In this document: positions 9,853 to 64,000 of the stretch, one piece after another
How the letters are laid out: every line of letters begins with the position of its first letter
Numbering within the stretch: position 1 is the first letter of the stretch
Origin: Anaeramoeba ignava BMAN
Taxonomy: Eukaryota > Protista > Anaeramoebae
NCBI GenBank assembly: GCA_028826165.1
Contig: JAPDFW010000112.1
Location: forward strand, 120,996-184,995
Length of the DNA stretch: 64,000 nucleotides
Direction: 5' to 3'
Notes under the pieces: generated by a model
Databases searched by the model: none
The model's input: the letters and a program-made list of their open reading frames with translations, nothing else
Told to the model about the DNA's origin: nothing
Position numbers and translations under genes: made by a program

Positions 9853-9961
9853 GAAAATTTTTGATTTTTAATTAAAAAATAAAAAGGGAAAAAACCAAAA
9901 TTTTTTTTTCATTTTTTTTTTCATTTTTTTTTATATAATTAATTAATTAATCTATTAATTA

Positions 9962-12900: not shown

Positions 12901-15900
12901 TGAATTCCGACACAACTATTTTTACACAAGCCTTCAATTAATGGAAAGCATTTCCTACAAAAACGCGGATTTAATTAGTTTAATTTTTCGGTTGATTGCA
13001 AAGAATATTAATGTGATAGAAACTAGTATTGAAAGCAAATTAATGAAGGCAATCCCGTTTGAATTATGGAAACCAAACAAGAAAGATGTGCAAATTTTGG
13101 AAGAATGGCTTTCATTTGGAGATAATTCAAGATTGTTTAGACTATCTCAAGCGCTAATCGATAAACTAAATTTTGGATATTCTCCAAAGAATCGAGATGG
13201 CCAGAACAATGAAGATCAACTCTTCATTCCCGCGTTAATTCATCGGGAAATATTTCTAGCTCTTGCACGAGCTTGGCTAAAATTCAAATCAATTCTGCCA
13301 ATTTTGAAAAAGAAGAAAAAGAAGAAATTCCAATTTTGGTGCTGGAAAACATCTTTTAAATTGAAAATATTTTCGAATTTTGGCAGAAGACTTGCACCAG
13401 CTTTCAAATATGAAACGGATATAAGATTAAAACCTTTGATAAAACAAACATTAACTGAAAAAGGAGCAAATAGTTTTATATCATGGTTTTTATTGATGAC
13501 AACAGATTTTCTTTGGCTTCATTCACAAAAGAATCCGCAAAATAACGCCGAAGAAAAAAAAATGAAAGAATACAAGCAACGCAGATATTTCATGTTTAAT
13601 TCTCTGCAAATAAACAAACACATGCATTGCTTCATCAAGATGCTGTTTTATTATACACTGCAAATTTTGGATCATAAGAATTTTGGAATTCAGGAATTGA
13701 AAGAAAATCAAAATGAAAAGTATTCCTTGAAATTGCATGTCCAAAAAATATACAATGCAGCAATTTATCTCTTTGAAATTTTCCGTTTTGCAATTTCCTC
13801 GCAATATATAAGAACATATTCACCCCCGTTTCTTGTTCACAAAACTTCAGATATAATTTCTCAATTAATCATTTCGATGATTTTTGTTCAAAACAGATTT
13901 CGGGAGTTTAGTGTTTTATCAACTCAAAAAATAGAAGAAAATTTCACTGAAGATTTTATTCAAGATGAATTGAATCAAATTTCAATAGAAATTGGGAAAA
14001 ATATTAAAAGTGAGGAAAAAATAAATCACAAAATCCTTTCAAGATCAGAAGAACTGATTATTTTTTGGGTTTCGATGCTCACTCATTATGAAAACTGGAA
14101 ACAAAATGAAATTACACAAAAATCACTTAATGAGCTGTTTAAATTCACTTTCCAATTTAGAATGGGAGGAATAATCCAGCATTTTTTCCAACTAAAATTC
14201 CCAAAAAATCAAGTACAAAATCTACAACAGAAGAGAATTGAAAAAACCAAATTCTCACCAATTATTGATCGAGAAGATTATGTATTCAACCAGAAAAATC
14301 AGTTGTTAAATCAAAACCCTTTCTTTTTGTTTTTCTTTTTGATTTATGAAACACGGATGCAATATGAAAATCGGAAAATTATTGGGAACGAAATCTTGAA
14401 GAAAACAGAAAAGAAGACAAGAAAGTTTCTGAAGAAGAAAAATATTCAAGATCACTTGAATCATATTTTCTGGTGGATTGAGTTTATTTTCTATTCTAAA
14501 TCAAATAATCCACTTTTGCCTATTATTTACCAAGTATTTTTTTCGTTATTTTTTGAGACCAATTTAACAAATTTGATTTTTGAGGATATGAATAATTTTA
14601 ATGATGCTATTCAAGATCATAATTACAAAAGTGATTTGGGAAATTTTGAAACATATATCAATGATAAAATTGTTTGGTATGGAAAAAGCTTATTATCAAT
14701 GTGCTATAAAATGATAACAAATGGAAATGACTTAATATATCATCTATCAGAAAAGATACATTCTGTTTTGAATGAAAGTCAGCCTTCATTGGAATCTAAA
14801 TTGCCAACAAAATTTGATCCACTTCTTCTTGGGAGAAGGAGTTTGATTTATTCATCTATGGATTTATGGATGAAAGAACCAATATCTTCACTTTTCAAAA
14901 TTATAAAATCAAATCAGAATATGGATATATATAGATACTCTCCAAATCGATTGAATACTGTTTTATTAGGAGATGGTCCAAAAATCAATTTAATTGAAGA
15001 AAAACTTGAAAATTGTTCAAAATTTTTCTCTTCTTTCTGGGATGATTTACTTGAGAATCAACCAATTTTTTATGTTCATGGATTAAGATATGGATTTAAT
15101 TTAGATATTTTTTTTACCCAAACGAAAGTGGAGAAGAATATAAATCAAAATATAAATATAAATACAAATACAAATCAAAAAATAAATCAAAATCAAAAAA
15201 TAAATCAAAATCAAAATATAAATATAAATCAAAATATAAATATAAATATAAATCAAAATCAAAATATAAATCAAAATCAAAATACAAATCAAAATACAAA
15301 TATAAATATAAATCAAAATCAAAATATAAATCAAAATATAAATCAAAATAAAAATATAAATATAAATCAAAATATAAATCAAAATCAAAATATAAATACA
15401 AATATAAATATAAATCAAAATCAAAATATAAATCAAAATCAAATTCATCCCATTTTTCAACAAATAAATCTTTTAATGGAACAATTCCGAGCATTTTACT
15501 TAAAAGGAAAAGAAATTGATCAACAATTTACTGATTTACAACCCAAATTATTTTTCAACCAAAAATTTGCAAAACGTATTGCATTTTTTGAAGAATATAT
15601 TATTGATAACGGAAATGTTTTTTTAATAAACAAAATATCGCAAAATGAAGTTGTTCTATTTAATTCTAAAATCAACCGAAAAAAATATAATTCGCTTTTT
15701 CATTTTCACATGATTGATCCTTCTATATCAATAAATTTAATTTTGATACTAGAAAAACATATCAAGTCATTAATTAAGAAAAAAAAGAAAGGAAAGGAAG
15801 GAAGTATTACTCATTCAATAAACTTGGAATTAAAAGAAATGAAAAGTCTTGAAGATATTTATTTTTGGAGTAATTTATTATTAGATTTATTAGCAAATAA

Positions 15901-18778
15901 ATGCTGTTGTTTTTATTCACCAATGATTAACTTATGTGTGGAAGTACTTCCTGGAATTATTGAAATTATTTTTGGAGATATTCAAAAAGAAAAAATAATA
16001 GAAGTTAATGGGAAGTTGATTAATTTTGAACAAAAAACAATATCTGTTTTCATATCTTTATTAAATATCAAATTATATGAATATTTCCCGAAACTTTATC
16101 AAATTCTTGAAGGGTTTTTGCAAAAAATAATTTCACATCAAAATTTTGATAATTTATATACAATTTTTAAAGTGATATTATTGAATACTATTAAGAAAAA
16201 ATGTCATCCAAATGCTTGGGATCTAATTACTAATTCGCAACTTTTGAAGAATTTTTCAAGTGAAAATATCAGCAAATCAATTAATATATTTTTGAAAGCA
16301 TTTCAATTTTTAAAAGCAAGATTAGTTCGCCAATTCTTAGAAGAAAAAATCAAGAAGAAAAACGATGGAAATGAAACTTTCATTGTTGGAAATGTGAATT
16401 TGAATAATTTCTTATTAGAATATACTGAAAAGATCATGAAATTGGTATCAAATTTGCTTAAGGCATCGAATAACAAAGGAAAAAAGAATAATGGATATCA
16501 AAACCAATTAGTGTTTGAAATATTTGCTCCATTTATTGAAACTAGAAGAGATGGGAAATATGTATTTTTACCTTTTTCTTTTGATGAAAATGAAATTTTA
16601 CAAGCAAAAATTATTATCAAAACGTTTTGCAAGCAATTTAAACAATGGGGAAATGAAGAATATTTCATTTCTGATTTTGGGCATATTTTGGGAAATTGTA
16701 AAATGGAAACAGAATATTTATCATCCTTATTTTTTGATGTTTTCAAAAGTGATCTTCCTTTCAAAGAAGTTGAAGTTAATTTACCAATTATTTCTTGGCT
16801 GACTGAAAATGTAGGGTTTAATAACTCAATTTTTATTATTGATGTTATTGGAAAATTTCAATGGAATAAGTTTTTGGAAATGAATTTTAAAGAAATGGCT
16901 ATAGGAAGTAATTATAGAGAAGATAAATTTTTAGAGTCGATATTACATTTATTTTTAACACTAATTACTAACATACCAAATGATCTTACATTTGAGGAAG
17001 ATTGCTATATAAAAAGCAAAATGATTGATTTTGTTGGGAAGTTCAAATGGGAGAATATAAATGAAGAAGATTATATTCAAGTAAATAATTTGTGTCTGAA
17101 ATGGGTCAAGAATCCTCAATTGAAAGATGTTAAAAATGATGGTTTTTTTAGTAATTTTGATGATGAAAATATTGAATTACAAGATGATTTGAAAAATTAC
17201 ATTTCTCTTTGTTCAAAAGATGAATTTACAATGATCTTTATATTGAGACTTTTAGAGGTTGTTGGTAAAGTTTTAGAAATTCCTAATCAGAAAAAATTTG
17301 AAGTTTTAATAGAAACTATATACAAGTTAATTTTGGAGATGATTTCTCAAGAAAATTTAACAAGAGGATATATGATGAAAAAGGGAGAAAATTTGATTGA
17401 AAAACGATTAGAATTTTTAAATTATTATGAAAATGAAAATGAAAATGAAAATTTAAATCAAATTCAAAATGAAAATTTAAATCAAAATCAAAATCTAAAT
17501 GAAAATCTAAATCAAAATCAAAATCAAAATCAAAATCAAAATTTAAATCAAAATCAAATTGAAAATGAAAATGAAAATCAAAATCAAAATCAAAATTTAT
17601 ATCAAAATCAAAATCAAAATATAAATCAAAATGCTCAATGGGTAATTTCTTGGAAATTTATTCTTCAAATTTATTATTATCTACTCCATCTTATTTTTAA
17701 AGAATACCAAATTTCAAGAAATGTTAATGAAAATATTATGAAACTTTCACTCTCATTAATGAATACAAAATCGAGTTTTCTCTCGAAAAATATGATAGTT
17801 CTAACTTTTAATTTTGTGGAAGAGTTTCCTTTGATGGGTTTTTATATTGCAAAAAATATAAATGAAAGTTTGAATTCAGATATATCCAAAATATTTCTAC
17901 TTGAAAAATGCACAAATAGTCTTCTTGCAAATACAATTTTGAAAGATGAAAAAACACAAGAGATGATGAGATTACCTCTTGAGAAAGAAGAAATACAAAG
18001 ATGTATTGATGATTATGGAGGTTCTCATGTTATTTTGTATCAATTTCTGAGAAATATTGAAATTGCAAAAAATAGTGATGGAAAAATTGGATTGAATTAT
18101 TTAGTGAAATTGAATCAATGGATTTTTACTTTAATATTGAGTATTCCATTTTTATTAGGAAATGAATATAAAATGACGACTTTGGTTTTGTTGTATCTTT
18201 CGAATTTGAAGTTGTTATTCAGGAATGAGAATAAGATTAGCAAAGAATATGAATCAAAACAAAAAATGCAATTGAAAGAATTAGGATTTGTATTTGATCA
18301 AATGCGTTTAGAGGTTTCACGAATCCAGAAGAAGAATTTAAAGCAAGATATTGTGTTTCCAAAAGTATATATTTTGTGTTTTTCGATTCTTGGAATGTTT
18401 TTTGAAAATCAAGACAGTTTAATTTTGAATGAACTTCCAAATGGAATGAAAAAATTAAAGAAGAAAGAAAAGAAGATGAATCACTCACAACAATTAAAGT
18501 TAATCAAAGTGAAGAAAAAGGTACAGAAGATATTGAGTGGATTGAAGAAGGAATTAGTTTTGAATGGATATTCTGGTAATGAGAAATTTGGAGAAGAAAT
18601 TTTGAAGATATTTGAAGAAAAGAAGAAAGATCTTGTTTTTTATGTTGAGAGTGGGATAGATTTGATATATTTTATTGCGAAGATTTTATCTTTTGATTAT
18701 AAGGATCGAGATTATTTGCTTGTTATTGAGAAGATTTATTTAGGAGAATTTAAGATTGAAATTTCTGACAAGAATTAA
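9962..18778 (+). CDS. EPG5: Ectopic P-granules protein 5 (EPG5) homolog, autophagosome-lysosome tether
   Basis: ATG at 9962; phase-0 intron 10046..10126 joins in frame to ORF 10238; an NQ tract with frameshifts (~10520-11620) precedes ORF 11789..18778. EPG5-like motifs: KAIPFELWKPNKKDVQILEEWL, LIDKLNFG, LFIPALIHREI, PLLPIIYQVFFSLFF. Confidence 0.7.
10520..11620 (+). repeat. (AATCAA)n microsatellite, Asn-Gln coding tract within the EPG5-like gene
   Basis: Long run of aaatca/aatcaa hexamers with occasional indels. Confidence 0.85.
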
Positions 18779-28982: not shown

Positions 28983-31900
28983 TTATTTCTCATCATTGCT
29001 TTTTGAATTGAGTAATTCCTTAACAACATTTGATTGAAAACTATAATTTTTAAATATTTTTTGTTCTTCCTGAGTTAAAATTGAAGAAACTTCTAAAGGT
29101 GGAATCCAATTATTCTTTTCAATATTTTGAAAAAGTGGCTAATAAAAATAAATTTAAAAATAAATTTAAAAATAAATTTAAAGTTTAAAATGTTTTTTGA
29201 AAAAGTGGAATAAAAAGTACTTTAGGAATAAGAGGAGGTGTTAAGCTTTTTTTCGCAATTTGTTCCCAATCAATTCCTTTAAAAAATTCATGTTTTTGAA
29301 TTTCTTGAAAACCATTATAACCAATTCTTTCATTTGGATTTTTTTCCAAAAGCTAAAAATAAAAAAAAATTATTTAAGAAATTTTCCCTAAAAAAAAAAT
29401 TTTTTTTTTTGATTAAATTTTAATCTTGTACTTTTGCTATCAAATCTCCACAAGGTTTAGAAATTAATTCATCAATGATTGGTTTATCATTTAATATTTG
29501 ATCAAGCATTTTTGTTTGATCTGGTGAATAAAAAGGAGGCTAAATCAAAATTTTCAAAATTCAAAAAATAAATAAATCGAAATTCGGAATAAAAATGAAA
29601 AAAAACTTACCAAACCATGAAACATTTCATATAAAATAACTCCTACACTATAAAAATCAGAAGCAAAAGTCGGATTTTGAATTTTAAGTAATTCTGGAGC
29701 TAAATTAAATTAATTTAGGTTTTTTTTTTGGGATTTAATTTGAAAATTTTAAAGATATTTTTTATTATAACAAAATATACCCATATAAGCAAAAGTTCCA
29801 CAAACAATTGGTGGATTTATTCTTGTTGATGTTTCTTTGATTATATCAGTTGCAGAATCAAAATCTATGATTCGAATATGACCGTCTTGAGCTGAAATTA
29901 AAATATTTTCAGGTTTTATATCACTATTCAAAGAAAACATTTCAATTTAATTTATAATTTAATTTATAATTTTATTTATAATTTAATTTATAATTTAATT
30001 TATAATTTAATTTATAATTTAATTTATAATTTGTTTATAATTTTATTTATAATTTAATTTATAATTTAATTTATAATTTTATTTATAATTTTATTTATAA
30101 TTTAATTTATAATTTTATTTATAATTTTATTTATAATTTAATTTATAATTTTATTTATAATTTAATTTATAATTTAATTTATAATTTAATTTATAATTTA
30201 ATTTATAATTTTTATTTATAATTTTATTTATAATTTAATTTATAATTTTTATATTTTATTTTATATTTTATTTATATTTTAATTTTAATTTTAATTTATA
30301 ATTTTATTTATAATTTTATTTATAATTTTATTTATAATTTTATTTATATTTTTATTTATTATTTTAATTTATAATTTTATTTATAATTTTATTTATAATT
30401 TTATTTATAATTTTAATTTATAATTTTTATTTATAATTTAATTTATAATTTAATTTATAATTTTATTTATAATTTTATTTATAATTTAATTTAATTTTAA
30501 TTTATAATTTTATTTATAATTTTATTTATAATTTAATTTATAATTTAATTTATAATTTAATTTATAATTTAATTTATAATTTTATTTATAATTTTATTTA
30601 TAATTTAATTTATAATTTAATTTATAATTTAATTTATAATTTTTAATTTATAATTTTATTTATTTATTTATATTTTTATTTATAATTTTATTTATAATTT
30701 AATTTATAATTTAATTTATAATTTTATTTATAATTTTATTTATAATTTTATTTATAATTTTTATTTATAATTTTATTTATATTTTTATTTATATTTTAAT
30801 TTATAATTTTAATTTATAATTTTAATTTATAATTTAATTTTATAATTTAATTTATTATTTTATTTATAATTTTATTTATAATTTAATTTATAATTTTTAT
30901 TTATAATTTAATTTATAATTTTATTTATAATTTTATTTATAATTTTATTTATAATTTTATTTATAATTTTAATTTATAATTTAATTTATAATTTTATTTA
31001 TAATTTAATTTTATAATTTAATTTATAATTTAATTTATAATTTTATTTATAATTTAATTTATAATTTTATTTATAATTTTATTTATATTTTTATTTTTTT
31101 TTTTATTTTATATTTTAATTTATAATTTAATTTATAATTTAATTTATAATTTAATTTATAATTTAATTTATAATTTTATTTATAATTTTATTTATTATTT
31201 AATTTATAATTTTATTTATTATTTTAATTTATTATTTTATTTATATTTTAATTTATAATTTTATTTATATTTTTATTTATAATTTTATTTATAATTTTAT
31301 TTATAATTTTATTTATATTTTTATTTATAATTTTATTTATAATTTTATTTATAATTTTATTTATAATTTTATTTATAATTTTATTTATAATTTTAATTTA
31401 TAATTTAATTTATAATTTTATTTATAATTTTATTTATAATTTTAATTTATAATTTTATTTATAATTTAATTTATAATTTAATTTATAATTTTATTTATAA
31501 TTTTAATTTATAATTTTATTTATAATTTTATTTATAATTTTATTTAATTTTTTTTATTTATAATTTAATTTATAATTTTTATTTATAATTTTATTTATTA
31601 TTTTTATTTATAATTTTATTTATTATTTTATTTATAATTTTAATTACAATTTTATTTATAATTTAATTTATAATTTTTATTTATAATTTAATTTATAATT
31701 TTATTTATAATTTTATTTATAATTTTATTTATAATTTTATTTATAATTTAATTTATAATTTTATTTATAATTTTATTTATAATTTAATTTATAATTTTAT
31801 TTATAATTTTATTTATAATTTTATTTATAATTTTATTTATAATTTTATTTATAATTTAATTTATAATTTAATTTATAATTTTATTTTATAATTTTTATTT

Positions 31901-32664
31901 ATAATTTATTTTTTTATTTATAAATTTTATTTATAATTTTATTTATAATTTTATATAATTTTATTTATAATTTAATTTATAATTTTAATTTATTATTTTA
32001 ATTTATTATTTTATTTATATTTTAATTTATAATTTTATTTATATTTTTATTTATAATTTTATTTATAATTTTATTTATAATTTTATTTATAATTTAATTT
32101 ATAATTTTATTTATAATTTTATTTATAATTTTATTTATAATTTTATTTATAATTTTAATTTATAATTTTATTTATAATTTAATTTATAATTTAATTTATA
32201 ATTTTATTTATAATTTTATTTATAATTTTATTTATAATTTAAAGTTACCCATGAATGATTCCAAAAGTATGGATCCAATCTAAAGCAACTAAAATCTCTG
32301 CGATATAAAATCTCCAAAAATCCTCACCAAAATTATCAGTTTGATGCATAATATGAGTCAACTCCGGACCATGAATGAATTCAAAAACCAAATACAAATT
32401 ATCTTCATCTTGAAAAGAACCAAAAGCATTAGAAACAAAAGGACCTGAAAGTTGAATTGCAAGATTTCTTTCTTTGAAAACATTTTGAACCAGATCTTTT
32501 GTTATGATCTCTTTTTTATTATATTGTTTAATCGCAACTTGTTGTTTTGTTAGTTTCTCTATTGCTAAAAATAATTTAGAACTGTGTCCTCTTGCAATTT
32601 CCGTTATTAACTGAAAATTTTTTGCATCAATTCTTTTATTAAAATCACAACAAATATTTCCCAT
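28983..32664 (-). CDS. AGC-family Ser/Thr protein kinase, N-terminally lipid-anchored, with atypical HGD/DFD motifs
   Basis: MGNICC N-terminus; VAIK; HG|DIKPEN across intron 29924..32248; IIDFDSAT; CGTFAYM-APE; downstream exons SDFYSVGV, KNPNERIGYNG..KHEFFKGIDW..PPLIP; hydrophobic motif IFKNYSF; stop at 28983-28985. Confidence 0.85.
29945..32240. repeat. 12-bp minisatellite (TTATAATTT[A/T]AT) filling the 2.3-kb kinase intron
   Basis: A period-12 repeat is directly visible. Confidence 0.9.
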
Positions 32665-48619: not shown

Positions 48620-50695
48620 TTATTTTTCAAACAAAAATTCCTTTAAAAGTTCTAGTTTTTGTCTTAAATTAAATACAGGAAAATTTGGATCAAATGATAA
48701 ATTTTCAAGAAGAAAATGAAAATCTTCATTTTGAATTTCATTTTGAATTTGATTTTTATTTTTATTTTCATTTTGAATTTGAATTTGATTTTGAATTTGA
48801 TTTTCATTTTGAATTTGATTTTGATTTTGATTTTGATTTTCATTTTGATTTTCAATTTGATTTTGATTTTTATTTTGATTTTCAATTTGATTTTCAATTT
48901 GAATTTGATTTTGATTTTTATTTTCAATTTGATTTTCAATTTGAATTTCATTTTTAATTTGATTTTTATTTTGATTTTGATTTTGAATTTGAATTTCATT
49001 TTGATTTTGAATTTGATTTTCATTTTGATTTTGATTTTGATTTTTATTTTCAATTTGATTATTTTGATTTTGATTTTGAATTTGAATTTCATTTTCAATT
49101 TGATTTTGATTTTTAATTTGATTTTGGTTTTCAATTTGATTTTGAATTTGATTTTGATTTTGAATTTGATTTTGATTTTGATTTTCAATTTGAATTTGAA
49201 TTTGATTTTTATTTTCAATTTGATTTTCAATTTGAATTTCATTTTTAATTTGATTTTTATTTTGATTTTGATTTTGAATTTGATTTTCATTTTGATTTTG
49301 AATTTGATTTTCATTTTGATTTTGATTTTGATTTTTATTTTCAATTTGATTATTTTGATTTTGATTTTGAATTTGAATTTCATTTTCAATTTGATTTTTA
49401 ATTTGATTTTGATTTTGAATTTGATTTTCAATTTGAATTTCATTTTTAATTTGATTTTTAATTTGATTATTTTGATTTTCAATTTGATTTTTATATTCAA
49501 TTTTAAATTGATTTTGATTTTCATTTTGATTTTCAATTTTAAATTCATTTTGATTTTCAATTTTAAATTCATTTTCTAATTGATTTTCATTTTGGTTTTC
49601 ATTTTGATTTTCAATTTTAAATTGATTTTCATTTTGATTTTCAATTTTAAATTGATTTTGATTTTCAATTTTAAATTCATTTTCTAATTGATTTTGATTT
49701 TGATTCAATTTTAAAATTTCTTGCTTAAGAATATTCCAACTTTCTTCAAGATTTTTTGCAAACAAATCAAGAGTAAATTGAAGAACTTTAAATTGAGGAT
49801 CTTTTTCCCATAAATAAAGAACATAATTGATAGGTTTGAGATTTTTAAAGACAAGAAAATAATGATCAGGATATGAATTTTTTTTGAAACAAATTGAAGG
49901 AAAAATTCTTTGAGTTTTTTCTTGAGAATCAATAGATTCATGACCAATAAGAATTAAAAGGGACCAAATAGGAGGAGAAAGAAATGTATTTGGAGAATTT
50001 CGTGGAACACAAATATGCACTTCTGTGTCTGTATTTTGTGCGGATGTGATGCTGTTTTTTAATTCCAAAAGATCATTCTTGAAACTTTGAATAATTTCAT
50101 TTTCATAATCAAAAGGGGATTCATTTAATAAAGATGAATAAGTTGAATATTTTCTTCCTTCAAGTAAAGCTTCAACATATTTTTTTTCTTTTAATAATTT
50201 CTTGTATTTAATCTGATAAATCCTCGCTAATATTTCTGTTTCAATTGGCGTATTTTTGATTGAATCAATTGAAACACAAGAAATCAAACAATCCAATTCA
50301 AATTCCTTTTGAAAAATCACATTCATTAAATTTTTGAATATTTCGATATTGAAGTTAGTTTGCAAATTTGATAAAATTTCTTGAATATCTTCGTTATGAA
50401 TTGGTCTCGATCGAAAATGCCGAGAAATTATAGTGTTTGATATTATTCGATGCTTTATTAATTCAGATGCTTTCTTAGGCATTAATTTTCTTGCCTCTTC
50501 AAAATCCTTTTCTGCTTTTTTATTCTCATTTAATAAACAATAACAATATCCTCTATTATTATAAAATAATCCAATTGTTGATTTTTCTTCAATTGCTTGT
50601 GAAAGTAATTCTACAGCTTCTCTTAATTTTATTTCTGTTTGTGATTCTTGTGATAAAATAATACATGCTTTTTTATATTTTAAATAATATTCCAT
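48620..50695 (-). CDS. TPR-containing protein with a long N/Q/E/I low-complexity tract
   Basis: [48 protein letters not shown] is a typical TPR pair; intact 691-aa ORF. Confidence 0.75.
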
Positions 50696-50903: not shown

Positions 50904-53900
50904 TTAATCTGGTGAAGACCAAACAATTAATGCAGTTCCTCTTTGATACCATGTTTGAATTGGAACATCTTTTGGTGTTGTTAAATCAAGTGAAAATAAT
51001 AACTCTTTTCTTGTATTATTCAAATAAACAGGTAAATTAATTAAATCACTTCCAACTTTTGATTTCACATTCAATTCATTTTCTTGATTAGGAACCCATC
51101 TTAATTGAACTCTGGGTAAAGGATTTGAAATATCACTTGAAATAGCCAAACAATTATTTTTCCAAATTGCTCCTTCAAGTGTAAAATCATCAACAAAAAA
51201 ACTTGTGTTTTTAAATTTGGATTGTGTAAACTTCCCAATTTCAATCTCTAATTTTAAGGTTTCTAAAGACCACATATTAGATTGAGCCGCAGATTGTCTT
51301 GTTGCTGTGATAAATGCCTCTGGTGAAAATAACCCACCAAGCCATATTCCATCAAGACAATAATTTTTGGATAAAATAATTTTTTGTAACTGTTTGATTC
51401 GTTTTGAAAAATCAACAATCCAAATTCCAACAGGAATATTAGCAACTGAATAAACTCTCCAAGAAGAAGGAATAGTTGCTTGAGTTAAATCACGAATCAA
51501 ACCTCTTAAGTAATTTGTGTGTTTCTGTTTTCCTTGACATAATAATAAAATCTTCTCAAGATCTTCTCGAACTTTATTCAATAATTTTTTCCCTATTATA
51601 ATTTCCCTATTGAAACATCTAAACAATGGGTCTTTAATACTACTTTCTGTTTTCTTCAATGAATCAAGTGATTTTGGTAAAATATCAATCCATTCTCTTG
51701 TTGATTTTTCAAGTTTTTTCATCCATGAAGGTCGACGATCTTCTTTTTTTTCTTTTTCAATATCTGATTTTTCTTCTTCATAAATATTTTCCATCTTCAA
51801 GAAATTTCCAAGTGTTTCTTTGCCTTGATTTGCTAATAAAAGAAGTTCTGCTTTAGCAGGTAATCCGAGCCAAGCAGGATTTTCATTTTTAGGTAATTTC
51901 TCAATCCAATCAGCAAAATGTTCCATTTTGGTTCCTTCTGGAATTTCAAGTGAAAATTTATCAAATCCATCTTCAGTAAGTGAATCATATTCAATCAATT
52001 TGAAATTCAATGAGTAACTTTTGGGAACAAATAGTTTTTCAAGCATTGAATCAAGAAGTCTTTGATCAAAATCATTATCAATTCTTCCACCATACATAAC
52101 TTGTCCCAAAATGGTTCTAATTGCAATCCAAGGAATTTTCTCAGGATCAACATTGGATCTTCCCTTTGCAACAGATCCAACCCAATAATCAATTGAATCA
52201 AGTGAACATCTTTGATCTGCTTCATTGAATTCATATATTTTTGACCATCCCAATGGAACATATCGAAGTCTTTCTTGAATAACAGCATGAAGCCAAGAGA
52301 GAATAAAATGCATTCTTGCTCTTTCAACTGGTGCTCTGTTGACTCTTTTACTTGATAGAAGTGAAAATGTGTGGGAAAGATTAGCTTTGATTCCTGGAGG
52401 TGCTTCAAACACAAAAATTTGGCACAATCTCAAGAAATTAACAGGTAATTTAGGATTAAATTCTGAAGTCATAAACAATCTAAATCCTGGTTCTGGATTG
52501 ATATTTCTGACTCTTTTTTCTATCTGATTCAACCATGGTGGTGCTAAATGGACATTCTTAATCAAAACCCAACTTCCAATCTTGGCTGCTGTTTCAATCG
52601 CTTGTTCAGCATGATGATAACTTTCTTGTGATCCAATTGCTATTGATTGTTTTTTCACTCCCAATTCATTCGCTAATTCATCTACTCTCGTACTAGGATC
52701 ATATCCTGGTTGTGTGCATAATAATAATGGTTCTCTTGCATTTGATTCTTTTTCAATAACATTTTTTAAGTTCAATTCTGGTATTGATTGGATATTGTAT
52801 CCAAATACTGTTTCAATAAGACTTGATGTTCCTGAAAGAACTCGATCAGGTCTGAAGAATTTCAATAATAATAACCGCTTAAGCATTTTCTTCACATTCA
52901 TCCAGTGAGCTTTTTCTTCTTCGCTTACAACTTCGGTTGATTTTGAGAACGAAAATCCAATTTGTTGTTGTTTTTGTTGTTTCCCAATTTTCAGGAATAT
53001 TTGATTCTGGATTTGCTGATTTGATAAAGTTCTTCCATTCACTTTGATTCTTTCTAATATGAGAAGGTAAATCTTTAAATGAAGGTAATTCTGAGATAAT
53101 TTGAAGGTATTTAATTTGAGAAGATGGAATAACTGATTCAGGAATATTATAATAAGAATTATCAATTTTATCTTGCAATTTGTTTGGAGAAAGAATTATA
53201 TCTGAACGTAATAATAGATTCATTTCTTCCTCATCAAAATCTTGTCCCATTTGTTTCAGATAAATTTGGGCAAGTCTCAATGCAAATGTTAGTCTGTCTT
53301 TGTGAAGTAATCCATATGAAACTCTTCTGTAAATCACCTTGAAAAGATCGTGTGTTAAAATTTTCAATCTTTCTTCATAATCTTGAACATTCATAATATT
53401 CTGATTCATTGTGTTAACAACATTGAAGAAAATTCCAAGGAAGAAATTTAATGAATATTGATACAAATAATGAATTGAACTGAGTTGTTCAAGTGTGAAA
53501 TAAATTCTACTTGAAGATAATGCAAATGGTTCATATTTGGCTGAAATTTTAGTGATATTTGCCAATGTTTGATCTGCTTGATTTGCCTTTTCTGCAACTT
53601 CTGCTGCTTCTGTTTTCAATCTTTCAAGTGAATTGAACACGGAATCATCATCCAAAATATTTCCTTCAACTTTATTCAAAGCATCAAGAAGTGATTTTTC
53701 CAAATTTCTCAATCTGACTTTGTATTCTCCTTGCAATTTCAAAATATCTGATCTTTGTTGATCAATATCAGGTCTTTCATTTCTTAAAATATGATTCAAA
53801 CATTGTGCTTGTAAACTCTCAAGTGTAACTGTGAAATTGCAGAATGTTACTCTTGAACATAAATCAGGTGTGAAATTGAATGAAGGATCTCTTGTTGTCA

Positions 53901-56900
53901 TGAATAAATTAAATGATGGTGAAAAATAGATCTCTTGATCTCCTAATCGAATGACAACACCTCCTCCACTTTTGTGGAACTCCTTATTCAAAACTGGATT
54001 TAAAATTGGATCAATATTCTCAACATCTTGTAAAAGAATAGCTGTTCCAAATCTCAATGCACTTTCCAAATTTTTCATGAAAGAATCATCAAGGAAACTT
54101 GTTTTCGTAATTTTGGATGATTCAAATTGTCTCATTAAAAATTCAGTTGCTTGACCTGATGGATCAATAACAAGAGGATAACGATTAAATCTTGTTAAAA
54201 TGATTGCATTTTCAGTGCAAAGATCATCTGCAGGAAGAGAATTAGATTGCCAAATCAATCTATCATCAGGAACAGATAGATATTCAATTAATGATAATCC
54301 TTCTCTATATTTAATATTAACAGTCATTAAATGCTTTTTCCAAATATTCATTAATACTTGTCTGTAATGTTGATCGAAAAATCCAATGTAAGTTAAAAAG
54401 GAAGCTGAAAGTAAAACATCTCCTGGAACTGTTGACATTTGTTGCTGGAAACTCTGTGACTCCAAACTCCATCTTTCTTGTTCGCTTGATAAACTTTTCA
54501 TTAATGCAATTGATCTTTCAACTTTTTGTGAAACAAGATTCATTTCTGATTTGATTTCTTGTGTTTGGGAAATCAATTGTGCGTATTCTTCTGTATATCT
54601 TTGAATACTTTTCTCCAAATTTTCAATCATATCATTAAGTTCTTTTTGTTTATCTCTGAGTATGTTTGCTTTCTCTTCAAGTGATGCTACTTGTTTTTTC
54701 AATGGATCTACTTTCTCAAGAACAACTGAGTATTGAACTTGTGCTTCAAGCCATTTTTGCATTGGTCCACATGCTCTACTTGCTCTATTAACATTTTCAA
54801 AAGTGAATTTTGGATCGGCAAGTGCCTTGGAAACAAGATCTCTTGCTTTAGATGTCATTGAATTGGTATCAAAATTAACAACACTTGGAATAAAATCATC
54901 TTTTCTTAACAATCTTCGAATTTCTCCCCATGAAGTCTCTTTACTTCCCAAAAATTGTGAAACTGCTTGAAGAGTCATTTTAACTAATTCAGGTGGATTT
55001 GACATGGATTTTAATTCTTCTAAATGACTTTTCTTGATACTGTTAACACTTTTCTTTGCTGCTAAAACTGCAGGTTCTGCTTTTGAAAGATCATCCATTG
55101 CAATTTTTTGTTGTGCTGCAATTTCCTTGTTTTGCTCTTCCAATTTTGTTTGGATTTCAAGTGAGGCCTTTCTCTTTGCTTCTGCTTCTTGTTGATCTTT
55201 AACCATTTGTTTCAATTTAGCTTCTGCTTCTTCATTTTTGGATTCAAGTTCTTTTTCTTTTTGTTTCAATTTAAGTTGTAATTTCGCAACTTCTTCTTCA
55301 GTTTCTTTCATCTTTTTCAATCCAACATCCAAATGATGTTGTTGTTCTTCAAGAGAACTTCTTTTTTCATTGAAAAGATTCAGATAATGTGTAATGAAAT
55401 CCAAATAATGTCTTGGTGTAACATAATTACTTCTTCCTTGAGTTTTTTGCAATTTCTTTGATGATTTTTCAACACTTTTATGAATTGTAACAAAAGAACT
55501 AACAATTGATTCTCTATGATTAGGTGAATCTGGGAAATTATCTTTTGCATCAAATTCATGTGGGAAGCTAATTGGTGGGAAATAGTTTGGATTTTCCAAA
55601 TTAAGATCTTTTGTGAATTCATATCCAACTTGATACATTGCTGATGGTGACCAATCTCCAAACCAATCAAGTACACATCTGTTAAACAAAGCTGGTGAAG
55701 TTGCTGCTCGATTTGAAAAATCTCCTGTTGCTGGATTCATTGTGAAAACAATATGTAAATTGTTTTGAACTTGTTTTGTAAACCAATTAAATAATTCATC
55801 ATTTGTATCAAGAATTGCTCCATCAGATTGAGCTGCTTCTCTGCATTGATTCATTAAAGCTCCCATTTCATCTCCTTCAAATAAACCTGGTACTTCTCCA
55901 CTTGCCAATAATGCATTCATTCTTTCCAAAAATGATGTTTCAAGAATATTACTTTCATCGAAAATGAAACATATTTTTTCTCCTTTAATTCCTGCTCTTT
56001 TCATAACAACTCTAAGATCTTCATCAAAATCAAATAATGTGTATTTTCTACTAATTTTGATTTGGAAAACTGATAATCCATTCATCCAAGCAACAAATCT
56101 TGATAAAACTGTATTATGTGTAACTGTGAAATCTCCAAGTAAAAATCTTCTATTCCCATCAATTTCAAATCCACAATAATCTCCTTCTCCAATTAATTCA
56201 ACTTCAATTTCACTTTCTAAATTTGAATTTTGTATTTTATTTTGATTTCTAATTTTCTTATTTGGATTTCTAACAGGAATTTCTTCAATTTCATTTCCTG
56301 ATATTATAATTTTTTCTTTTTCTTTTTCACAAGAAAATCCAAGTGAACGTGAAATGAATTGAATATCTTTATATAATTCTTCTTGATTTTCATTAATTGG
56401 AATATTATAACAATTATTCATTTCATCATAAATTATTTCATCATTTGAATCAATTAATCCTGCCAAAATATTTAATCTTGTTTCACGATCATTAATTTTA
56501 TAACATTGAGGAATTTTAATTTCTTCATCTGATTTATTGTTTTCCATTCCAAGATAAATTCCCAAATTATAAGGATCTATTGGAATATTTGGATTTGAAT
56601 TGAATTGAATTGGAACTTTAAATCCAACATGATATTTTTTCCAAATTTGAGGTTTCTTAATATAATCAATAACAGCAATATCAATAACATCTCCTTTATG
56701 ATTATATTTTTTACTTTCCAAAATTTGATTTATAAATTTGTTTGCGAAATGAAGAGCATTTAAACTTGAAGTAAAAGATTTAGATTCAGATAATTTTCTT
56801 TTTTTACCGTAATTGAAATATTTAATTTTCTCACAATGATTTTCAAAATAAAGAACTGAATATCTTTTAAGATCTTTTTCATGATTAAGAATTGAATTGA

Positions 56901-59900
56901 TTGTTAATTTCAAAGAAAGAATATGAGGTTCATTAACAATATATTCATCACCATTTGATTGTTTTATTCGATACATATTTTCTCTTCCTTTACAAATACT
57001 TAAAACATTTCTTGGATTTGAATCATCACCCATAAGTTGATCATTAACTTTAATATTTTTAGCCAATTTTGATTTTCCATTATAAAGCATAACAGGAGTA
57101 TTTGGATCTAAGCATTTACCAGCACCACTTGATCCAATTAGCAAACAATGACCTAAAATTAAAATAAAATTAAAATAAAATTAAAATAAAATTAAAATAA
57201 AATTAAAATAAAATTAAAATAAAATTTAAATAAAATGAAAATAAAATTTAAATAAAATGAAAATAAAATTAAAATTAAAATTTAATTAAAATTAAAATAA
57301 AATTAAAATAAAATTAAAATAAAATTAAAATAAAATTAAAATAAAATTTAATTTAAATAAAATTAAAATAAAATTTAAATGAAATTAAAATAAAATTTAA
57401 ATAAAATTAAAATAAAATTTAAATAAAATTTAAATAAAATTAAAATAAAATTTAAATAAAATTTAAATAAAATTTAAATAAAATTAAAATAAAATTTAAA
57501 TAAAATTAAAATAAAATTTAAATAAAATTAAAATAAAATTTAAATAAAATTTAAATAAAATTTAAACAATATTTAAATAAAATTTAAATAAAATTAAAAT
57601 AAAATTTAAATAAAACTTAAATTGAAATTATTTTGAAATTATTTTGAAATTTACCTTGTGGTTGCTTTAATACTCGATCAATTCTTAAAATATGATCAAG
57701 TGCTTCATTAAATAATACTAATTTAACATTCAATTCTTCTTCATAAAATACTTTCAATCTGGCTTTAACATGTTCTCTTAATTTCTCTCTATCAACATCC
57801 ATATAATCCTTAGATAACCAATCACTAAATAAAATGGGTCTTTCAAGAGTTTTCTCTCGGATTCCTGGGAAATATTTCTTAGAAACTGAATCTAATTGTT
57901 CATCAGTCCAATCTCTTTCTTCTTTATAAACTAATCTATCTTGAAACAATCTTAATCCTTCATGAACAAATATTCTAACAAGTCCATCTAAATCAAGATC
58001 TCCACCTAAAGGTTTTAAAATTTCTCTGAGAGAACGAGTCCATCTACTCAATTCTCTTGGTGAATAAACATAATGAGGTTGCATATCTTGTGTGAATCTT
58101 TGTTGAGAAAGTGAATAAAATTCAACCATTGCATCTGTTAATGATCTTGCATTTGAACGAAGAGTAGGACACAATCTAAGAACTGCTCTATTAAAAGTTC
58201 CATAAATTTGTTTGAGTGAATCTGCAGAAGGATAATCAACAAGAATTACAGGTGCATGTCTAAGGAATCGATGTGATAAAGGAACTCGACCAACCATTGT
58301 TGGTGGATTACATGCTCCTACAAATTGAATTCTTCTTGTTGTTACCCATTGATAATCCGATATTCTCCAAAATCCTCCTCTTTCAACTAATTGTCTTAAA
58401 AATGTTATTACTTTTTGTGTTCCATATCGATCTTGTTTGGGAAGATTAATTTCATCACAGAAAATAACAAGCCATTTATCTAATTTTGTTGGCTCAAGAA
58501 TAACTCCATTTGGTGTTTTTTGATATTTGCAATAATGTGTTAATGTTTTCATAACTAATTCAGGTGTTGTTGCACTTGAAAAGTTAATTCCTACAACTTC
58601 AAAATTTGGTAATGATCGAAGTGTTGAATATAAAGTCATTGTGTTATGTGTTACAACAAAATTATCTGTTAAATATAATTCTTCTGGATGATCAATTGTA
58701 ATACATGTACATTCATCTTCTCCAACACATTCAATAGAAATTATTCTTCTTTCAAATACAAATGGACTTGGTTCTCCAATTTTATCTTTATTTTTGGATA
58801 ATTTGAATAATTCTTTTGGTGTTTTATAGAAAATTTTGCATAAATTTGTTTTGTTTGAATTTGTTTCAATTGAACACATTCCTCCCAATGATTGAATAAC
58901 TTTTTTAAAATCTTGTGATAATTTTGTTGATTTACATTTGAATATAATTGAGTTATCTTTATAATTAATGGATGAATTTGAATCTAATAATCCTTTAATA
59001 ATTTCCAATCTAATTTCTTTAGAATTGAAAATGTAATCTTGAGGAATAAATAATTTATCTTTTGGTTGATTTAAAAGTCCCAATTCTTCAAGTATTTCTT
59101 TATAATGATTTTGTTTTTCAATATTTTCATTTCCAATATAAATTTCTTCTTTTCCAATTAAAACTCCAAGTAAATAAGGATCAAAAGGAACATTTCTTTC
59201 CATAAATAAAATTGGTTTTGGAGTATCAATACTAAATCTAGCTCCTTTTCTTTCAGGAATAGTTGGGATAATTTGAAGATTATCAATAATTTGTTGAGTT
59301 GTAAGAACAAATTTTTGTTTTTTATAATTTGAATGATCATTAACAGTCCAAAGATGATCAGCAGAACAATCAACAAAATCTCCATCTTCAAATTTAACTC
59401 GATAAACATGAAGTTTACCTTGTGGATAAATACCAATAATTTTAGAAGTTTTTCCATCAGGAGTGCAAACTACATCTCCAATTTTTAATTTTCCATTAAT
59501 TTTAGGTCCATTTGGAGTATAAACTGTTGCTGAATTTCTAAGTGATTTACCAGATCCAGGTGGTCCACAAAGTATTAAAGGAAGATGGTCTTTAAGCCAA
59601 GAATTAACAACTTCTTCATGTCTTAAAGTATCCACAGTTGGGATAACAACATCTGAACTAGCAACCATATATGTTTCAATTTCAAGATTTGGAACTCGAT
59701 TTTTCCATAGAGCCCATTCTCCATCTTCAATTTGAACTTCAAAATCAATTAATGGATGCATTTTATCTTCAGGTCCTTGAATATCACAATTATTTAATAA
59801 AAATGTTCCAAATTCTTCTCGATCTTGTAAAGACATTGATCCTCCAAATCCCCAAATCAATGAGAAAAGTAATCTTTTTGTAACATATTTTTTGGATATG

Positions 59901-62900
59901 TTCCTTTTCCATTGAAAACCAGAATGAGTTGAATTATATTCGTGAATATGGTTTATTCCTTGATCCAAAAGTGAGAATGCTGATGTTAATGAACGAAGAT
60001 TTGTGAAATCCATTACATTTTGTTTTTTAGAAGCATAATCAATTGCTTTAATAACAACACCATTTGAATCGAAATATTTTTTTAAAGCATCAACACAAAT
60101 TTCTTGAGTTCTTAATAACTCTTCATTTTTTTCTTTTTCATCTGAAAGTTGCTCTTCAAATCCAGTTTTTTCACTTTCTAATAAAGGAACATGTTTAGTT
60201 TTTTCAAGATAATGAGCAAAATTCATATCTAATGAAATGATATCATCAGAGAACCAAACCATTCCACATCTTGAAACTGTTGCTGGTGTTGCATATCTTA
60301 AGTCTTGAACTTCAAACATTACTCTGACATTAGGAGTCAAAGCAACTCTTTCACCATTAGGCAAAGTAAGTATTTTATTATCATCAAGAACTGAATTTAA
60401 ATTCTCAACCCAAATAGAATCAACATCTCCATCAAAAATAATCCAGTGTCTCATATTTGATTCTCCTCTTACATTATCAACAATTTTCCTTAAAATATGT
60501 GTGAATATTCCATCAGTCCATTCTCTTGTTGTTGGATCAAGAACTCCGAAAAGTTCTTCTTTAGTAATAGCTTTAGGATCAATAACATGTGATTGTGATT
60601 TAATTCCTTCAACTCTTTCAAGTGCTTCCAAAAGAATTTTCCATGCTGTTGATTTTCCACTTCCTGATGGACCAACCATCATAACTCCATGATGAATTTT
60701 TTGTAATTGAAATAATTGAAGCATTTTTTCTATCCATCTGTTTCCTGGAACTAAATAATGTTTCTTGCAAATATCATAAATAACATTTCTTAATTCTGCC
60801 ATTTCTAATTCTATTGGAAGTGCTCCTGGGAATACATCTGATAATAAACTGTGTAGTAATGGAATATCATCTGCAACTAATTTTGGAATAACTGTTTCAC
60901 ATATACTTTTAATAACTACAGATTTTTCTTCTTCTCCAAGTTGTTTTTTATCTTTGACTTCATCTTGTTTTTTATCTTTAATTTCTAATCTTTTTATATT
61001 TCCTGCTGAAACTAATACACTTTTTAAAGCTCTTAATCCAAAATCATAATGTTTTTGTGGTGAAAGTTGGTCTGCACATAAATTAAATAAAGGAACAACT
61101 TTTCCTGATAATTGTTCAGCTGTTTTAAATCCTATTTTAAAATTAATTAAAATTAATTAAAATTTTATATTTTTATTTTTTATATTTTTATTTTTGTTTT
61201 TACCTTGAGAAAAAAGCATAACTTGAGCAATTAATTCTCTATCAGGTTTAACAACAGAAATTGTTCTAAATAATGTTTTTAAATTTTCTGGTAATTGAAC
61301 TCTTCCAGTATAACCAGGATTCCTAAATTAAAAAAAAATTTTTTATTTAAATAAATAAATTTTTGTGTTTTAAATTTTATATATTTTTTACATTGTAATA
61401 AAAATTCCCATATTTGGATTAATTTTAACATTTCTTCCTATCAATTCAACTTCTTTTAATTGTTCTTTTAAAGATAATTGAATTGTTTGAATTTGTTGAG
61501 AAACTGCTGATAACATTCTTTCTTCTAATCTATTAAATTCATCAAAAACATCCCCAAGCTCCACATTGACAAAGACCAACAAAAATTCTTCCCATTGCTT
61601 GGAAATCAAAATTTTCATCACAATTAAAAACCAAAACAAATCTTCCTAATTGATTTCCAAGTGCTTTAACAGTTTCTGTATTATGTGTTACAATATGATT
61701 TTCTGTGATAAATAAATGATCTGGATGATCAATTAATATGCATTGACATTCATCTTTGCAAATATATTCAATTTTGGAAACAAATCTTTCATTAATAAAT
61801 TTTTTAGATTTTTTAGCAATTAAAATTTTATCATTTAATGTGAAAAGTTTTTCTGGTTTTTCAATTTCAATTCGACAATTAAATATAATTTCCTCGTTTT
61901 GTTTTGTTCTGGAAATATAACAAATTCCTCCAAGTGATTCAATTAATTTCTTTAAATCAAATGCTAATTGTTGAGATGATGTTGAATAAATTGGTGAATT
62001 TGTTTTGGAATCAAAATATCCATTTCTATCAAGAATTCCTTGAAGTAATTGGAATCTTATTTCTTTGGAATTAAATTGAAATTCATTTGGAATAAATTTA
62101 TTTTGTGAAAGTTTTGGCATATAATCATTAATTTGATCATAATAAATTTCATAATTTCCATCAGATGTAAGATTTAATAAATGCTGAATATTTTGGAAAA
62201 TTTGTTTGTTAATTGAATTGGAAATTTTGATATTTTGGTTTTCTAATATCTTTTCATTTCCTGCAATTAAAACTCCAAAAAGATAAGGAGATATTTTGGT
62301 TTTTTGAGTTTTGAAATTTGTATATTTAGGAGTTTCTATTGAAATTTTTTCTTCTCTTCTTAAACATCTTCTCATTTCTTGAGTTGTTATAATTTTTAGA
62401 TGAATGATCAACAGACCAAAAGATGATCATCAGAACAATCAACAAAACCACCATCTTTGAAATGAACTCTAAAAACACCAATTTTACCTTGAGGATAAAC
62501 AGCAAGAATTTTTAGCAAATTTTCCATCAGGGAGTACAAACTTCATCACCAATTTGTAAATCACCATTTAATTTAGGACCATTTGGAGTATAAACTATAG
62601 TTGAATTTCTTAAAGATTTACCAGTTCCAGCAGGACCAGCAGGAGCACCACCTTTTTATTTATTAAAAAATATTTATATTAATTTATATTTTAAATTTAT
62701 TTAAATATTTTTATATTTTATTTACCTAATCGCAAATTTAATGCTTGTGTTAATGTAAGATAACATCGATCTGTAAGTGGTGTTTGTACTAATTTATCAA
62801 CAACTCCTAAATATTCAAATCCATATGCAAATGATGCATTTGCAATTGAAATCATTAATTTCGTTTCATGACTTTCCTTTTCATTCCAATAAAATCTCAT

Positions 62901-64000
62901 TTCTTCAGTCCATGCAAAATCTTTTAGGGTTTTTACACCAGCTTGAATCAATCTTCTAATAACATCTCTTTGATGAATTAATTCAATAATTAAATGTTCA
63001 TATTTCTTTCTTGTAATTGGTTGTAAATCAAAAAGAACATTAAAAGCTAACAAATCTAAAATATTTCCAATCCAATCAAGTGTTTGTTTAAGGAAAACTT
63101 GACTATTATTTGAAAGTGCATTTTCAACTTTTTGTGTCCAAATTACTTTAATAGTAAGAACTATAATTTGAGCAGGTGTTGTTTCAACCCATTTTAAAAA
63201 GAGATCCTTATCAAGTTCATCTTTTGAAGATAATTGAATAAATTCTCTTAATGAAATATCCAAACAATTTCCCAAAGAAACTCTCATTTGATTTTCAACC
63301 ATATTCAGCCATTCATGAATTTTGGAAATTTCTTTATATTTAACAGGATCTGGAAAGTTAATTTCTTCATGTTCTCTTGATAACATCCCAATAATTGATG
63401 TTTCATCATCACTTAATTTAAGTAAAGCAATTCCTGCAAACATTTTCCTTAAATGTCTTTGTATTTTAACTACATCTTTGCTGTGTCCAATAATTTCCAA
63501 AAGATCTTCATCTCCAACAAAATAAAATCTTGGGAAAGCTGATCTTTGTTTTTCTAGATATTCACCAAGAGCCTTTTGAACTTTGGAAAGCATATCAGAT
63601 AATCTTTCCAATGTGTGTTGAAGACCTTGAATATTGAGAACATCAAGAATATGAGGTGATTTGGCGACTTTTTTCATCATGATGAGGAAATCATTATCAA
63701 TAGTTTTGAATTTGGATGATTCTTGAGGTAATAATTGTTGGATATCACTACTTCCACAAAATACTCCTTCTAAATAAACCCATTTTCTTTGAACATCAAT
63801 CCATGTATCAAAAAGTAAATGTAATCTGTTTAATTTATCTTCCCACGCAATTGCTTCTTCTTCAAATACTTTTATAAAATGGAGAGTTTTCATTGCGACA
63901 AGTGAATTTAGAGAATCAGAAATTTTGGTAAATAAATCATCCCATCCTTTAATCAGTTTACATTTATTCTGGTAATTCACGAGATCAAGGATGTAGTTTT
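50904..64000 (-). CDS. DYNC1H1: Cytoplasmic dynein heavy chain (motor domain; 5' part outside window), interrupted by three inteins
   Basis: [47 protein letters not shown], four P-loops, stalk/MTBD ([14 protein letters not shown]), AAA5-6 and C-terminal [13 protein letters not shown]. Introns 62652..62725, 61323..61391, 61132..61203 and 57153..57654. Apparent homopolymer frameshifts near 61545 and 52980. Confidence 0.95.
56113..57114 (-). mobile_element. Intein 3 in the dynein AAA4 Walker A (GSSGAGK|intein|TVLSRFVAW), 334 aa, degenerate LAGLIDADG domain
   Basis: In-frame 1002-nt insert: [13 protein letters not shown]...VNEPHILSL...[10 protein letters not shown]...[10 protein letters not shown]...[22 protein letters not shown]|T. 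Removing it restores [16 protein letters not shown]. Confidence 0.97.
57155..57615. repeat. 11-bp minisatellite (TAAAATAAAAT) filling dynein intron 57153..57654
   Basis: A period-11 repeat is directly visible. Confidence 0.9.
58643..59545 (-). mobile_element. Intein 2 in the dynein AAA3 Walker A (GPPGSGK|intein|TMTL), 301 aa, degenerate LAGLIDADG domain
   Basis: In-frame 903-nt insert: [13 protein letters not shown]...CSADHLW...[10 protein letters not shown]...[10 protein letters not shown]...FVVTHN|T. Removing it restores the canonical GPPGSGKTMTL. Confidence 0.96.
61680..62616 (-). mobile_element. Intein 1 in the dynein AAA1 Walker A (GPAGTGK|intein|TETVKALG), ~311 aa, degenerate LAGLIDADG domain
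   Basis: Starts [13 protein letters not shown], has block B CSDDHLW, ends HIVTHN followed by Thr. Endonuclease-like blocks are YLFGVLIAG and [10 protein letters not shown]. Four +1 homopolymer insertions in ~62395-62532 must be removed (937-4=933 nt). Confidence 0.92.

What the first reader, a model, noticed from the sequence alone, without database searches (positions are those of the whole stretch)
56113..62616. Cytoplasmic dynein heavy chain carries three inteins, one in each catalytic P-loop (AAA1, AAA3, AAA4)
Seen: three inserts of ~311, 301 and 334 aa with intein termini (Ser/Cys first residue, block B His, terminal His-Asn, +1 Thr). Each sits precisely between K and T of a Walker A GKT, and excision restores textbook dynein motifs. 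Established: inteins favour P-loops of nucleotide-binding proteins, but well-known eukaryotic nuclear inteins are rare and occur in hosts such as VMA1, PRP8 and RNA polymerase, not cytoskeletal motors. Inference: this cell must protein-splice ~946 aa out of three sites to assemble a working dynein ring, making minus-end transport dependent on, and potentially regulated by, triple protein splicing. Intein-rich genomes have been reported for Anaeramoeba, so novelty of these alleles must be checked there.
Basis: partly seen in the sequence, partly recalled or inferred. Interest (0 to 1): 0.95.

Follow-up and report, generated by a model that had tools for sequence, protein, structure and literature searches.

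The report
Three inteins in an amoeba's dynein
The microtubule motor cytoplasmic dynein of the anaerobic amoeba Anaeramoeba ignava carries three self-excising protein inserts (inteins) in its ATP-binding loops; they are real, but were already published in 2023 and are annotated in NCBI.

Summary
Real but already known. The window's genome matches the published Anaeramoeba ignava BMAN assembly exactly (42,843,398 bp, 147 scaffolds). Gallot-Lavallée et al. [quoted passage not shown] The inserts sit at the Walker A K/T of AAA1, AAA3 and AAA4. AAA1 and AAA3 are related class-3-type (Trp-Cys-Thr) inteins with phage relatives; AAA4 is an unrelated Cys1, VMA-like intein. All three lack the canonical endonuclease acidic residues. 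One correction: in the window the AAA1 insert is broken by four +1 homopolymer bases. It is intact in an overlapping contig, in a second paralog and in a spliced EukProt protein, so these are probably contig-end errors. Not in that paper's main text: both dynein-1 paralogs carry all three inteins and no intein-free copy was found; intein DNA differs 0.18% between paralogs against 3.5% in motor exteins (recent gene conversion); the axonemal dynein probably has an intein at AAA2. Splicing of these three inteins is untested, and regulation by splicing has no evidence. The scan noted the same trio on another contig (s1-692236).

The parts
50904..64000 (-). Cytoplasmic dynein-1 heavy chain gene, 3' two thirds (linker to stop). 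The 5' part lies on the overlapping contig C92; the window ends at the end of contig C113
   Evidence: Pfam DHC_N2, AAA_6, AAA_7, AAA_8, MT, AAA_9, Dynein_C; best PDB hits are DYNC1H1 and Dictyostelium dynein; NCBI model KAJ5068892.1 on a contig of 184,995 nt
61680..62616 (-). AAA1 intein, 311 aa when in frame; Ser1, block B C60-S-D-D-H64-L-W66, block F Cys, T-H-N/+1 Thr; class-3-type; four +1 bases in this assembly copy (62532, 62513, 62421, 62397)
   Evidence: protein identical in C92, C35 and EukProt P0002
58643..59545 (-). AAA3 intein, 301 aa; Ser1, H64, W66, C281, T299, H300, N301, +1 Thr; class-3-type; decayed LAGLIDADG domain
56113..57114 (-). AAA4 intein, 334 aa (336 in paralog A); Cys1, block B His, T-H-N/+1 Thr; class 1, VMA/Prp8-like; decayed LAGLIDADG domain
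   Evidence: Hom_end_hint E 1.6e-17, Hom_end E 1.2e-4; PI-SceI and Prp8 intein hits
60641..60673 (-). AAA2 Walker A (GPSGSGK/S), no intein
62652..62725 (-). Spliceosomal intron (GT-AG, 74 nt) ending 35 nt before the AAA1 intein
   Evidence: junction joined in EukProt P0002
61323..61391 (-). Spliceosomal intron (69 nt)
   Evidence: junction joined in P0002
57153..57654 (-). AT-rich spliceosomal intron (502 nt) ending 38 nt before the AAA4 intein
   Evidence: GT-AG ends and frame; no transcript evidence for this junction

Best explanation
The gene encodes an A. ignava cytoplasmic dynein-1 heavy chain precursor with three cis-splicing inteins (946 aa together) between the Walker A Lys and Thr of AAA1, AAA3 and AAA4. 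Shown: positions, intein motifs and fold, retention of the AAA1 insert in a spliced product, absence of an intein-free dynein-1 in the assembly. Inferred: each intein excises itself with the +1 Thr as the transesterifying nucleophile and Asn cyclisation at the C-terminus; AAA4 starts with Cys1 (class 1), AAA1 and AAA3 most likely with the internal block-F Cys (class 3), restoring GKT at each site. They are selfish elements from two independent sources: a phage-related P-loop family that spread within the Anaeramoeba genome (also Prp16, a second DEAH helicase, a Brr2-like and a RecA-like protein, kinesin) and a VMA-like family shared with large eukaryotic viruses. Their endonuclease active sites have decayed; they persist because only exact loss from an essential P-loop is tolerated. 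Recent gene conversion has made them almost identical in the two dynein-1 paralogs. The window's frameshifts are contig-end consensus errors.
For: Sites and termini (human numbering 45, 51, 52). Hint + LAGLIDADG fold. W66, C281, T299 invariant across 28 family members; C281 aligns with the engineered D107C of gp41-1_WCT, which outscores wild-type gp41-1. Most of the viral relatives sit at GK/T or GK/S and start with Ala, Glu, Gly or Leu, so the family does not need a position-1 nucleophile. Viral copies mostly keep GDG and D-T/S-D-G; the dynein copies read A-G-N, G-K-E, G-M-E and D-R-N-G, D-S-N-S, D-S-N-D. The paper reports three inteins in a dynein, class 3 character and P-loop hopping of cluster 1, and splicing of three other Anaeramoeba inteins. 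Paralog comparison. C92 and C113 end inside the same gene, overlap about 9.2 kb at 98-99.5%, and each carries its indels near its own end.
Against: Splicing of these three inteins has not been shown by anyone I could find. Ser1 and an S-x-x-H block B leave a class 1 start open for AAA1/AAA3. No raw reads could be laid. Transcript-level evidence covers AAA1 only, and P0002 turns into unrelated sequence after AAA2, so it is chimeric or misassembled. Paralog A also has a frameshift in the AAA3 lid and the window has one more frame change near 52900-53200; neither is resolved.
Confidence: 0.88

Rival explanations
1. The inteins are domesticated switches: the class 3 catalytic Cys of AAA1/AAA3 is oxidised on exposure to oxygen, splicing stalls and dynein is held as an inactive precursor until conditions are reducing again.
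For: Precedent: the class 3 P-loop intein DnaBi1 of Mycobacterium smegmatis is blocked by a Cys48-Cys118 disulfide under H2O2 (PMC6195587). The host is an anaerobe; AAA1/AAA3 keep extra cysteines (C60, C279 in AAA3 numbering); no intein-free dynein-1 exists to bypass them.
Against: No data on conditional splicing. This genome has 103 inteins in 79 proteins of unrelated function, and dynein is not among the eight sites shared with A. flamelloides, which fits selfish spread better than a conserved control. C60 and C279 are also common in phage relatives.
Confidence: 0.1
2. The window's copy is a real pseudogene (AAA1 intein frameshifted) and only another copy makes dynein.
For: Five +1 bases near AAA1, a compensating pair at 59916/59893 and a frame change near 52900-53200 are in the assembly; the paper mentions pseudogenised inteins.
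Against: All five are homopolymer extensions within 2.5 kb of the contig end; contig C92 covers the same locus without them; a spliced EukProt protein with this paralog's tail has the intact intein.
Confidence: 0.05
3. The near-identity of the inteins in the two paralogs is made by assembly polishing with cross-mapped reads, not by gene conversion.
For: The assembly was polished with medaka and Pilon; differences are patchy and the intein-free last 900 nt are also nearly identical.
Against: Neighbouring exteins and the intron 35 nt from the AAA1 intein keep paralog-specific differences (7 substitutions and 4 gaps in 73 nt); polishing has no reason to follow intein borders; the EukProt intein equals both copies.
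Confidence: 0.12

Closest known systems
A. ignava BMAN three-intein dynein (Gallot-Lavallée et al. 2023, PMC10710043; NCBI KAJ5068892.1, KAJ5071176.1, KAJ5078911.1)
   Same: Same genome, same gene family, same count of three inteins; cytoplasmic dynein 1 heavy chain named as a host; NCBI product names say 'intein-containing'.
   Different: The main text speaks of one paralog and gives no sites; I could not read Dataset S1 or Fig. 6B (no supplement held). The presence of all three in both paralogs, the conversion pattern and the C92/C113 overlap are not in the main text.
Anaeramoeba cluster 1 inteins / class 3 inteins (MP-Be DnaB, Msm and Mch DnaBi1)
   Same: WCT triad, P-loop GK/T site, phage relatives, spread among unrelated P-loop proteins.
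   Different: AAA1/AAA3 start with Ser rather than Ala or Pro and have S-x-x-H rather than D-x-x-H in block B; they keep a decayed endonuclease domain; the mechanism is untested.
Sce VMA intein (PI-SceI) and fungal Prp8 inteins
   Same: AAA4: Cys1, Hom_end_hint family, His-Asn end, LAGLIDADG domain between the splicing halves.
   Different: +1 Thr instead of Cys; site in a dynein P-loop; catalytic Asp positions not conserved.

Membership tests
Intein (cis-splicing) | In-frame insert whose removal restores a conserved host motif | tested here: met
   GK/T at three sites; following residue = human T1913, T2602, T2944. AAA1 in frame in C92, C35 and P0002, not in the window's consensus.
Intein (cis-splicing) | Hint splicing domain, split around the middle domain | tested here: met
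   AAA4 Pfam E 1.6e-17; AAA1/AAA3 by family profile and fold. Pfam and NCBIfam Hint models alone do not detect AAA1/AAA3.
Intein (cis-splicing) | Block B His, terminal His-Asn, +1 Ser/Thr/Cys | tested here: met
Intein (cis-splicing) | Insert is translated (kept in mRNA) | tested here: inconclusive
Intein (cis-splicing) | Self-excision and extein ligation | not testable with these tools
   Shown in the paper for three other Anaeramoeba inteins only.
Class 3 intein (AAA1, AAA3) | Trp B:12, Cys F:4, Thr G:5 | tested here: met
   W66, C281, T299 invariant; definition from PMC5050341; register from gp41-1_WCT
Class 3 intein (AAA1, AAA3) | No nucleophile at position 1 | tested here: not met
   Both begin with Ser; most viral relatives do lack one. 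They are class-3-type by motif; membership is not settled.
Class 3 intein (AAA1, AAA3) | Branched intermediate on the block-F Cys is obligate | not testable with these tools
   needs mutagenesis
Class 1 intein (AAA4) | Cys1 or Ser1, no WCT triad | tested here: met
   Cys1; no Trp at B:12; Gly at the F:4 position as in PI-SceI
Active LAGLIDADG homing endonuclease | Acidic catalytic residues in blocks C and E (PI-SceI D218/D326, numbering of function from my own knowledge) | tested here: not met
   Block C Asp absent and block E Asp replaced by Asn in all three; present in most viral relatives
Cytoplasmic dynein-1 heavy chain | Closer to DYNC1H1 than to dynein-2 or axonemal chains in each motor segment | tested here: met
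   AAA3 exon 520 bits to DYNC1H1 vs 127 best axonemal; AAA4 403-412 vs 155; AAA1 142-152 vs 124 for dynein-2. No tree built.

The most novel reading that the evidence does not exclude
Every cytoplasmic dynein-1 of this anaerobe must pass two class 3 splicing steps that rely on an oxidisable cysteine, so minus-end transport is gated by redox state, and gene conversion keeps both paralogs under the same switch.
Probability: 0.08. Interest if true: 0.7.

Novelty: already known. Interest (0 to 1): 0.2.

Why it matters
The fact itself (a core eukaryotic motor that must protein-splice three times) is striking but published. What remains useful: exact sites and classes for a splicing test; evidence that no intein-free dynein-1 exists in this organism; a natural Ser1 intein with the class 3 triad, a clean test of which nucleophile is used; an assembly fix (C92 and C113 are one gene); and a possible case of inteins homogenised between old paralogs after their endonucleases decayed.

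Tried and rejected
The spliced model was searched exon by exon by reference; the joined step was left out. NCBIfam and Pfam Hint models miss AAA1/AAA3. Three copies as haplotypes of a triploid: rejected, because the tails of C35 and C92 are only 64-68% identical in protein, the downstream TPR gene is single-copy and C92/C113 are overlapping contig ends. Direct jump AAA1 to AAA3 as sisters: not resolved; 47% identity is no higher than AAA3 to the Prp16 intein (48%), and FastTree does not pair them (two IQ-TREE runs and treekit failed; three partial sequences in that tree were clipped). A shared DNA target (same three codons at all three sites): rejected, chance of any shared triple 0.115 and other sites differ. 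Dyneins with these inteins in other organisms: none among the listed hits of three homolog searches and one profile search, but length limits and clustering would hide full-length chains, so absence is not shown. A literature search found no second paper on dynein inteins.
Full report
Verdict. The three inserts are real inteins in the Walker A loops of AAA1, AAA3 and AAA4 of a cytoplasmic dynein-1 heavy chain. The finding is already published for this same genome assembly.

Source. The window's genome has 42,843,398 bases in 147 contigs, the figures given for Anaeramoeba ignava BMAN in Table S1 of PMC11550330. Gallot-Lavallée et al. [quoted passage not shown] The paper's supplement is not held, so I could not confirm that it lists these exact sites.

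Observation. The gene runs on the minus strand from the window's end to 50904. Inserts lie at 62616-61680, 59545-58643 and 57114-56113, each after GK and ending His-Asn before Thr. The residues that follow map to T1913, T2602 and T2944 of human DYNC1H1, and each segment is closer to dynein-1 than to dynein-2 or axonemal chains. AAA2 is empty. The four GT-AG introns all lie outside the inserts.

A correction. In the window the AAA1 insert is not in frame: single extra bases stand in homopolymer runs at 62532, 62513, 62421 and 62397, with another in the extein at 61548. The NCBI model of this contig therefore starts after AAA1 and holds two inteins. The window ends where contig C113 ends, and contig C92 ends inside the stalk of the same gene; the two overlap by about 9.2 kb at 98-99.5% identity, and each has its indels near its own end. 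C92 has AAA1 and AAA3 intact, C113 has AAA3 and AAA4 intact. An EukProt protein of A. ignava (P0002, whose name has the form of a transcript-derived ORF call) joins three exon junctions and holds the 311-aa AAA1 intein, identical to the C92 and C35 copies. I read the shifts as consensus errors (inference). That protein turns into unrelated sequence after AAA2, so it says nothing on AAA3 or AAA4.

What the inserts are. AAA4 matches Pfam Hom_end_hint end to end (E 1.6e-17) and PI-SceI and Prp8 inteins: Cys1, class 1. Its listed relatives are inteins in helicases, AAA proteins and topoisomerases, mostly from metagenomes, one named from a giant virus. AAA1 and AAA3 are 47% identical and escape the standard Hint models, but a family profile hits gp41-1, the class 3 DnaB inteins and PI-SceI, and an AlphaFold model of AAA3 (pLDDT 91.8) matches PI-SceI at TM 0.67-0.75 and mini-inteins over most of their length. 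Trp66, Cys281 and Thr299 are invariant in 28 family members; this is the class 3 triad (PMC5050341), and Cys281 aligns with the engineered Cys of gp41-1_WCT. Viral relatives sit mostly at GK/T or GK/S and mostly begin with Glu, Ala, Gly or Leu. The dynein copies begin with Ser and have S-x-x-H in block B, so a class 1 start is not excluded. Family members in the same genome occupy the P-loops of Prp16, another DEAH helicase, a Brr2-like and a RecA-like protein; kinesins of both Anaeramoeba species carry related inteins. Most Anaeramoeba members group together (FastTree support 0.98), but AAA1 and AAA3 are not resolved as sisters.

Endonuclease. All three keep a LAGLIDADG-shaped middle, but the block C Asp is gone and the block E Asp is Asn in each, while most viral relatives keep both. 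By established knowledge of PI-SceI these are the catalytic residues, so the domains are probably inactive (inference).

Two paralogs, no empty copy. Searches with three dynein AAA families find only C35, C92/C113 and one axonemal chain on C126. C35 is a true paralog: its tail is 64-68% identical in protein to that of C92 and its downstream flank differs. It carries the same three inteins in frame, with one unresolved frameshift in the AAA3 lid. Between paralogs the inteins differ at 5 of 2,838 bases (0.18%), the motor exteins at 312 of 9,002 (3.5%). Differences are clustered, so I shifted the intein mask round the coding string: 1.3% of shifts, including the true position, did as well, and identity extends 110-157 nt upstream of each intein. 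The intein-free last 900 nt are also nearly identical, so conversion is not unique to inteins. As both copies share the same decayed active sites, ordinary gene conversion is the simpler cause; a polishing artefact remains possible.

How it works. Shown: anatomy, motifs, fold, translation of AAA1. Inferred from established intein chemistry: acyl shift onto Cys1 (AAA4) or the block-F Cys (AAA1, AAA3), transfer to the +1 Thr, Asn cyclisation, O-to-N shift, leaving GKT. An unspliced insert separates the Lys and Thr that bind phosphate and Mg, so each site should be inactive until spliced. With no empty gene, dynein-1 activity should depend on three reactions that remove 946 aa. Dependence is not regulation. 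A redox switch has a precedent in a class 3 P-loop intein (PMC6195587) and the host is an anaerobe, but 103 inteins in 79 unrelated proteins and little sharing of sites between species point to selfish spread.

No RNA run was listed. The spliced model was searched exon by exon; the joined step was left out.

Scores. Novelty: already known. Interest 0.2. Most novel reading left open: redox-gated dynein maturation, probability 0.08, interest 0.7 if true.

Noticed in passing
G000:C126:524970-525173 (-), axonemal dynein heavy chain: An intein N-terminus (44% to the AAA4 intein) begins directly after the AAA2 Walker A Lys (PF12774 position 326 ends at 525174), and the AAA2-AAA3 distance is about 295 aa longer than in the window's gene; AAA3 and AAA4 are uninterrupted. 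So all four dynein P-loops appear to have been hit in this genome. A break of about 180 nt falls at the AAA1 P-loop of this gene, possibly an intron at the empty site. The locus could not be fetched and the intein's C-terminus was not found.
   Followed up: partly
window 54847-64000 vs G000:C92:276288-285537: Contigs C113 and C92 overlap by about 9.2 kb and could be joined; NCBI splits this one gene into several models (KAJ5068892.1, KAJ5071176.1, KAJ5071177.1, KAJ5071178.1).
   Followed up: yes
window 62652-62725 and 57153-57654: Spliceosomal introns end 35 and 38 nt upstream of the AAA1 and AAA4 intein sites, so introns at that distance did not prevent (or came after) intein insertion.
   Followed up: partly
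L004, L007, L010, L014, L023, L024, L027, L037, L039, L048, L049, L057 (own genome): Related inteins in Prp16, a second DEAH helicase, a Brr2-like helicase, a RecA-like protein, SMC, a P-type ATPase (DK/TGT), MCMs, Lon, an eIF5B-like GTPase and Prp8, judged from flanks; the first 15 residues of the Prp16 and AAA3 inteins are identical.
   Followed up: partly
window 70-18778 (+): A run of long ORFs (693, 638, 569, 925, 2329 aa) with no Pfam hit; one ends in a GTPase-like P-loop (GEKSSGKS) and one is Cys/His-rich; possibly one very large gene with frameshifts or introns.
   Followed up: no
window 30001-32000: About 2 kb of almost pure A+T short-unit repeat (GC 0.001), probably intronic.
   Followed up: no
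window 52880-53200: Frame change and a 25-nt difference relative to paralog A between the AAA5 and AAA6 regions; not covered by C92, so error or real is open.
   Followed up: no
window 48620-50695 (-): Single-copy TPR protein with a long N/Q/E/I repeat directly downstream of the dynein gene.
   Followed up: partly
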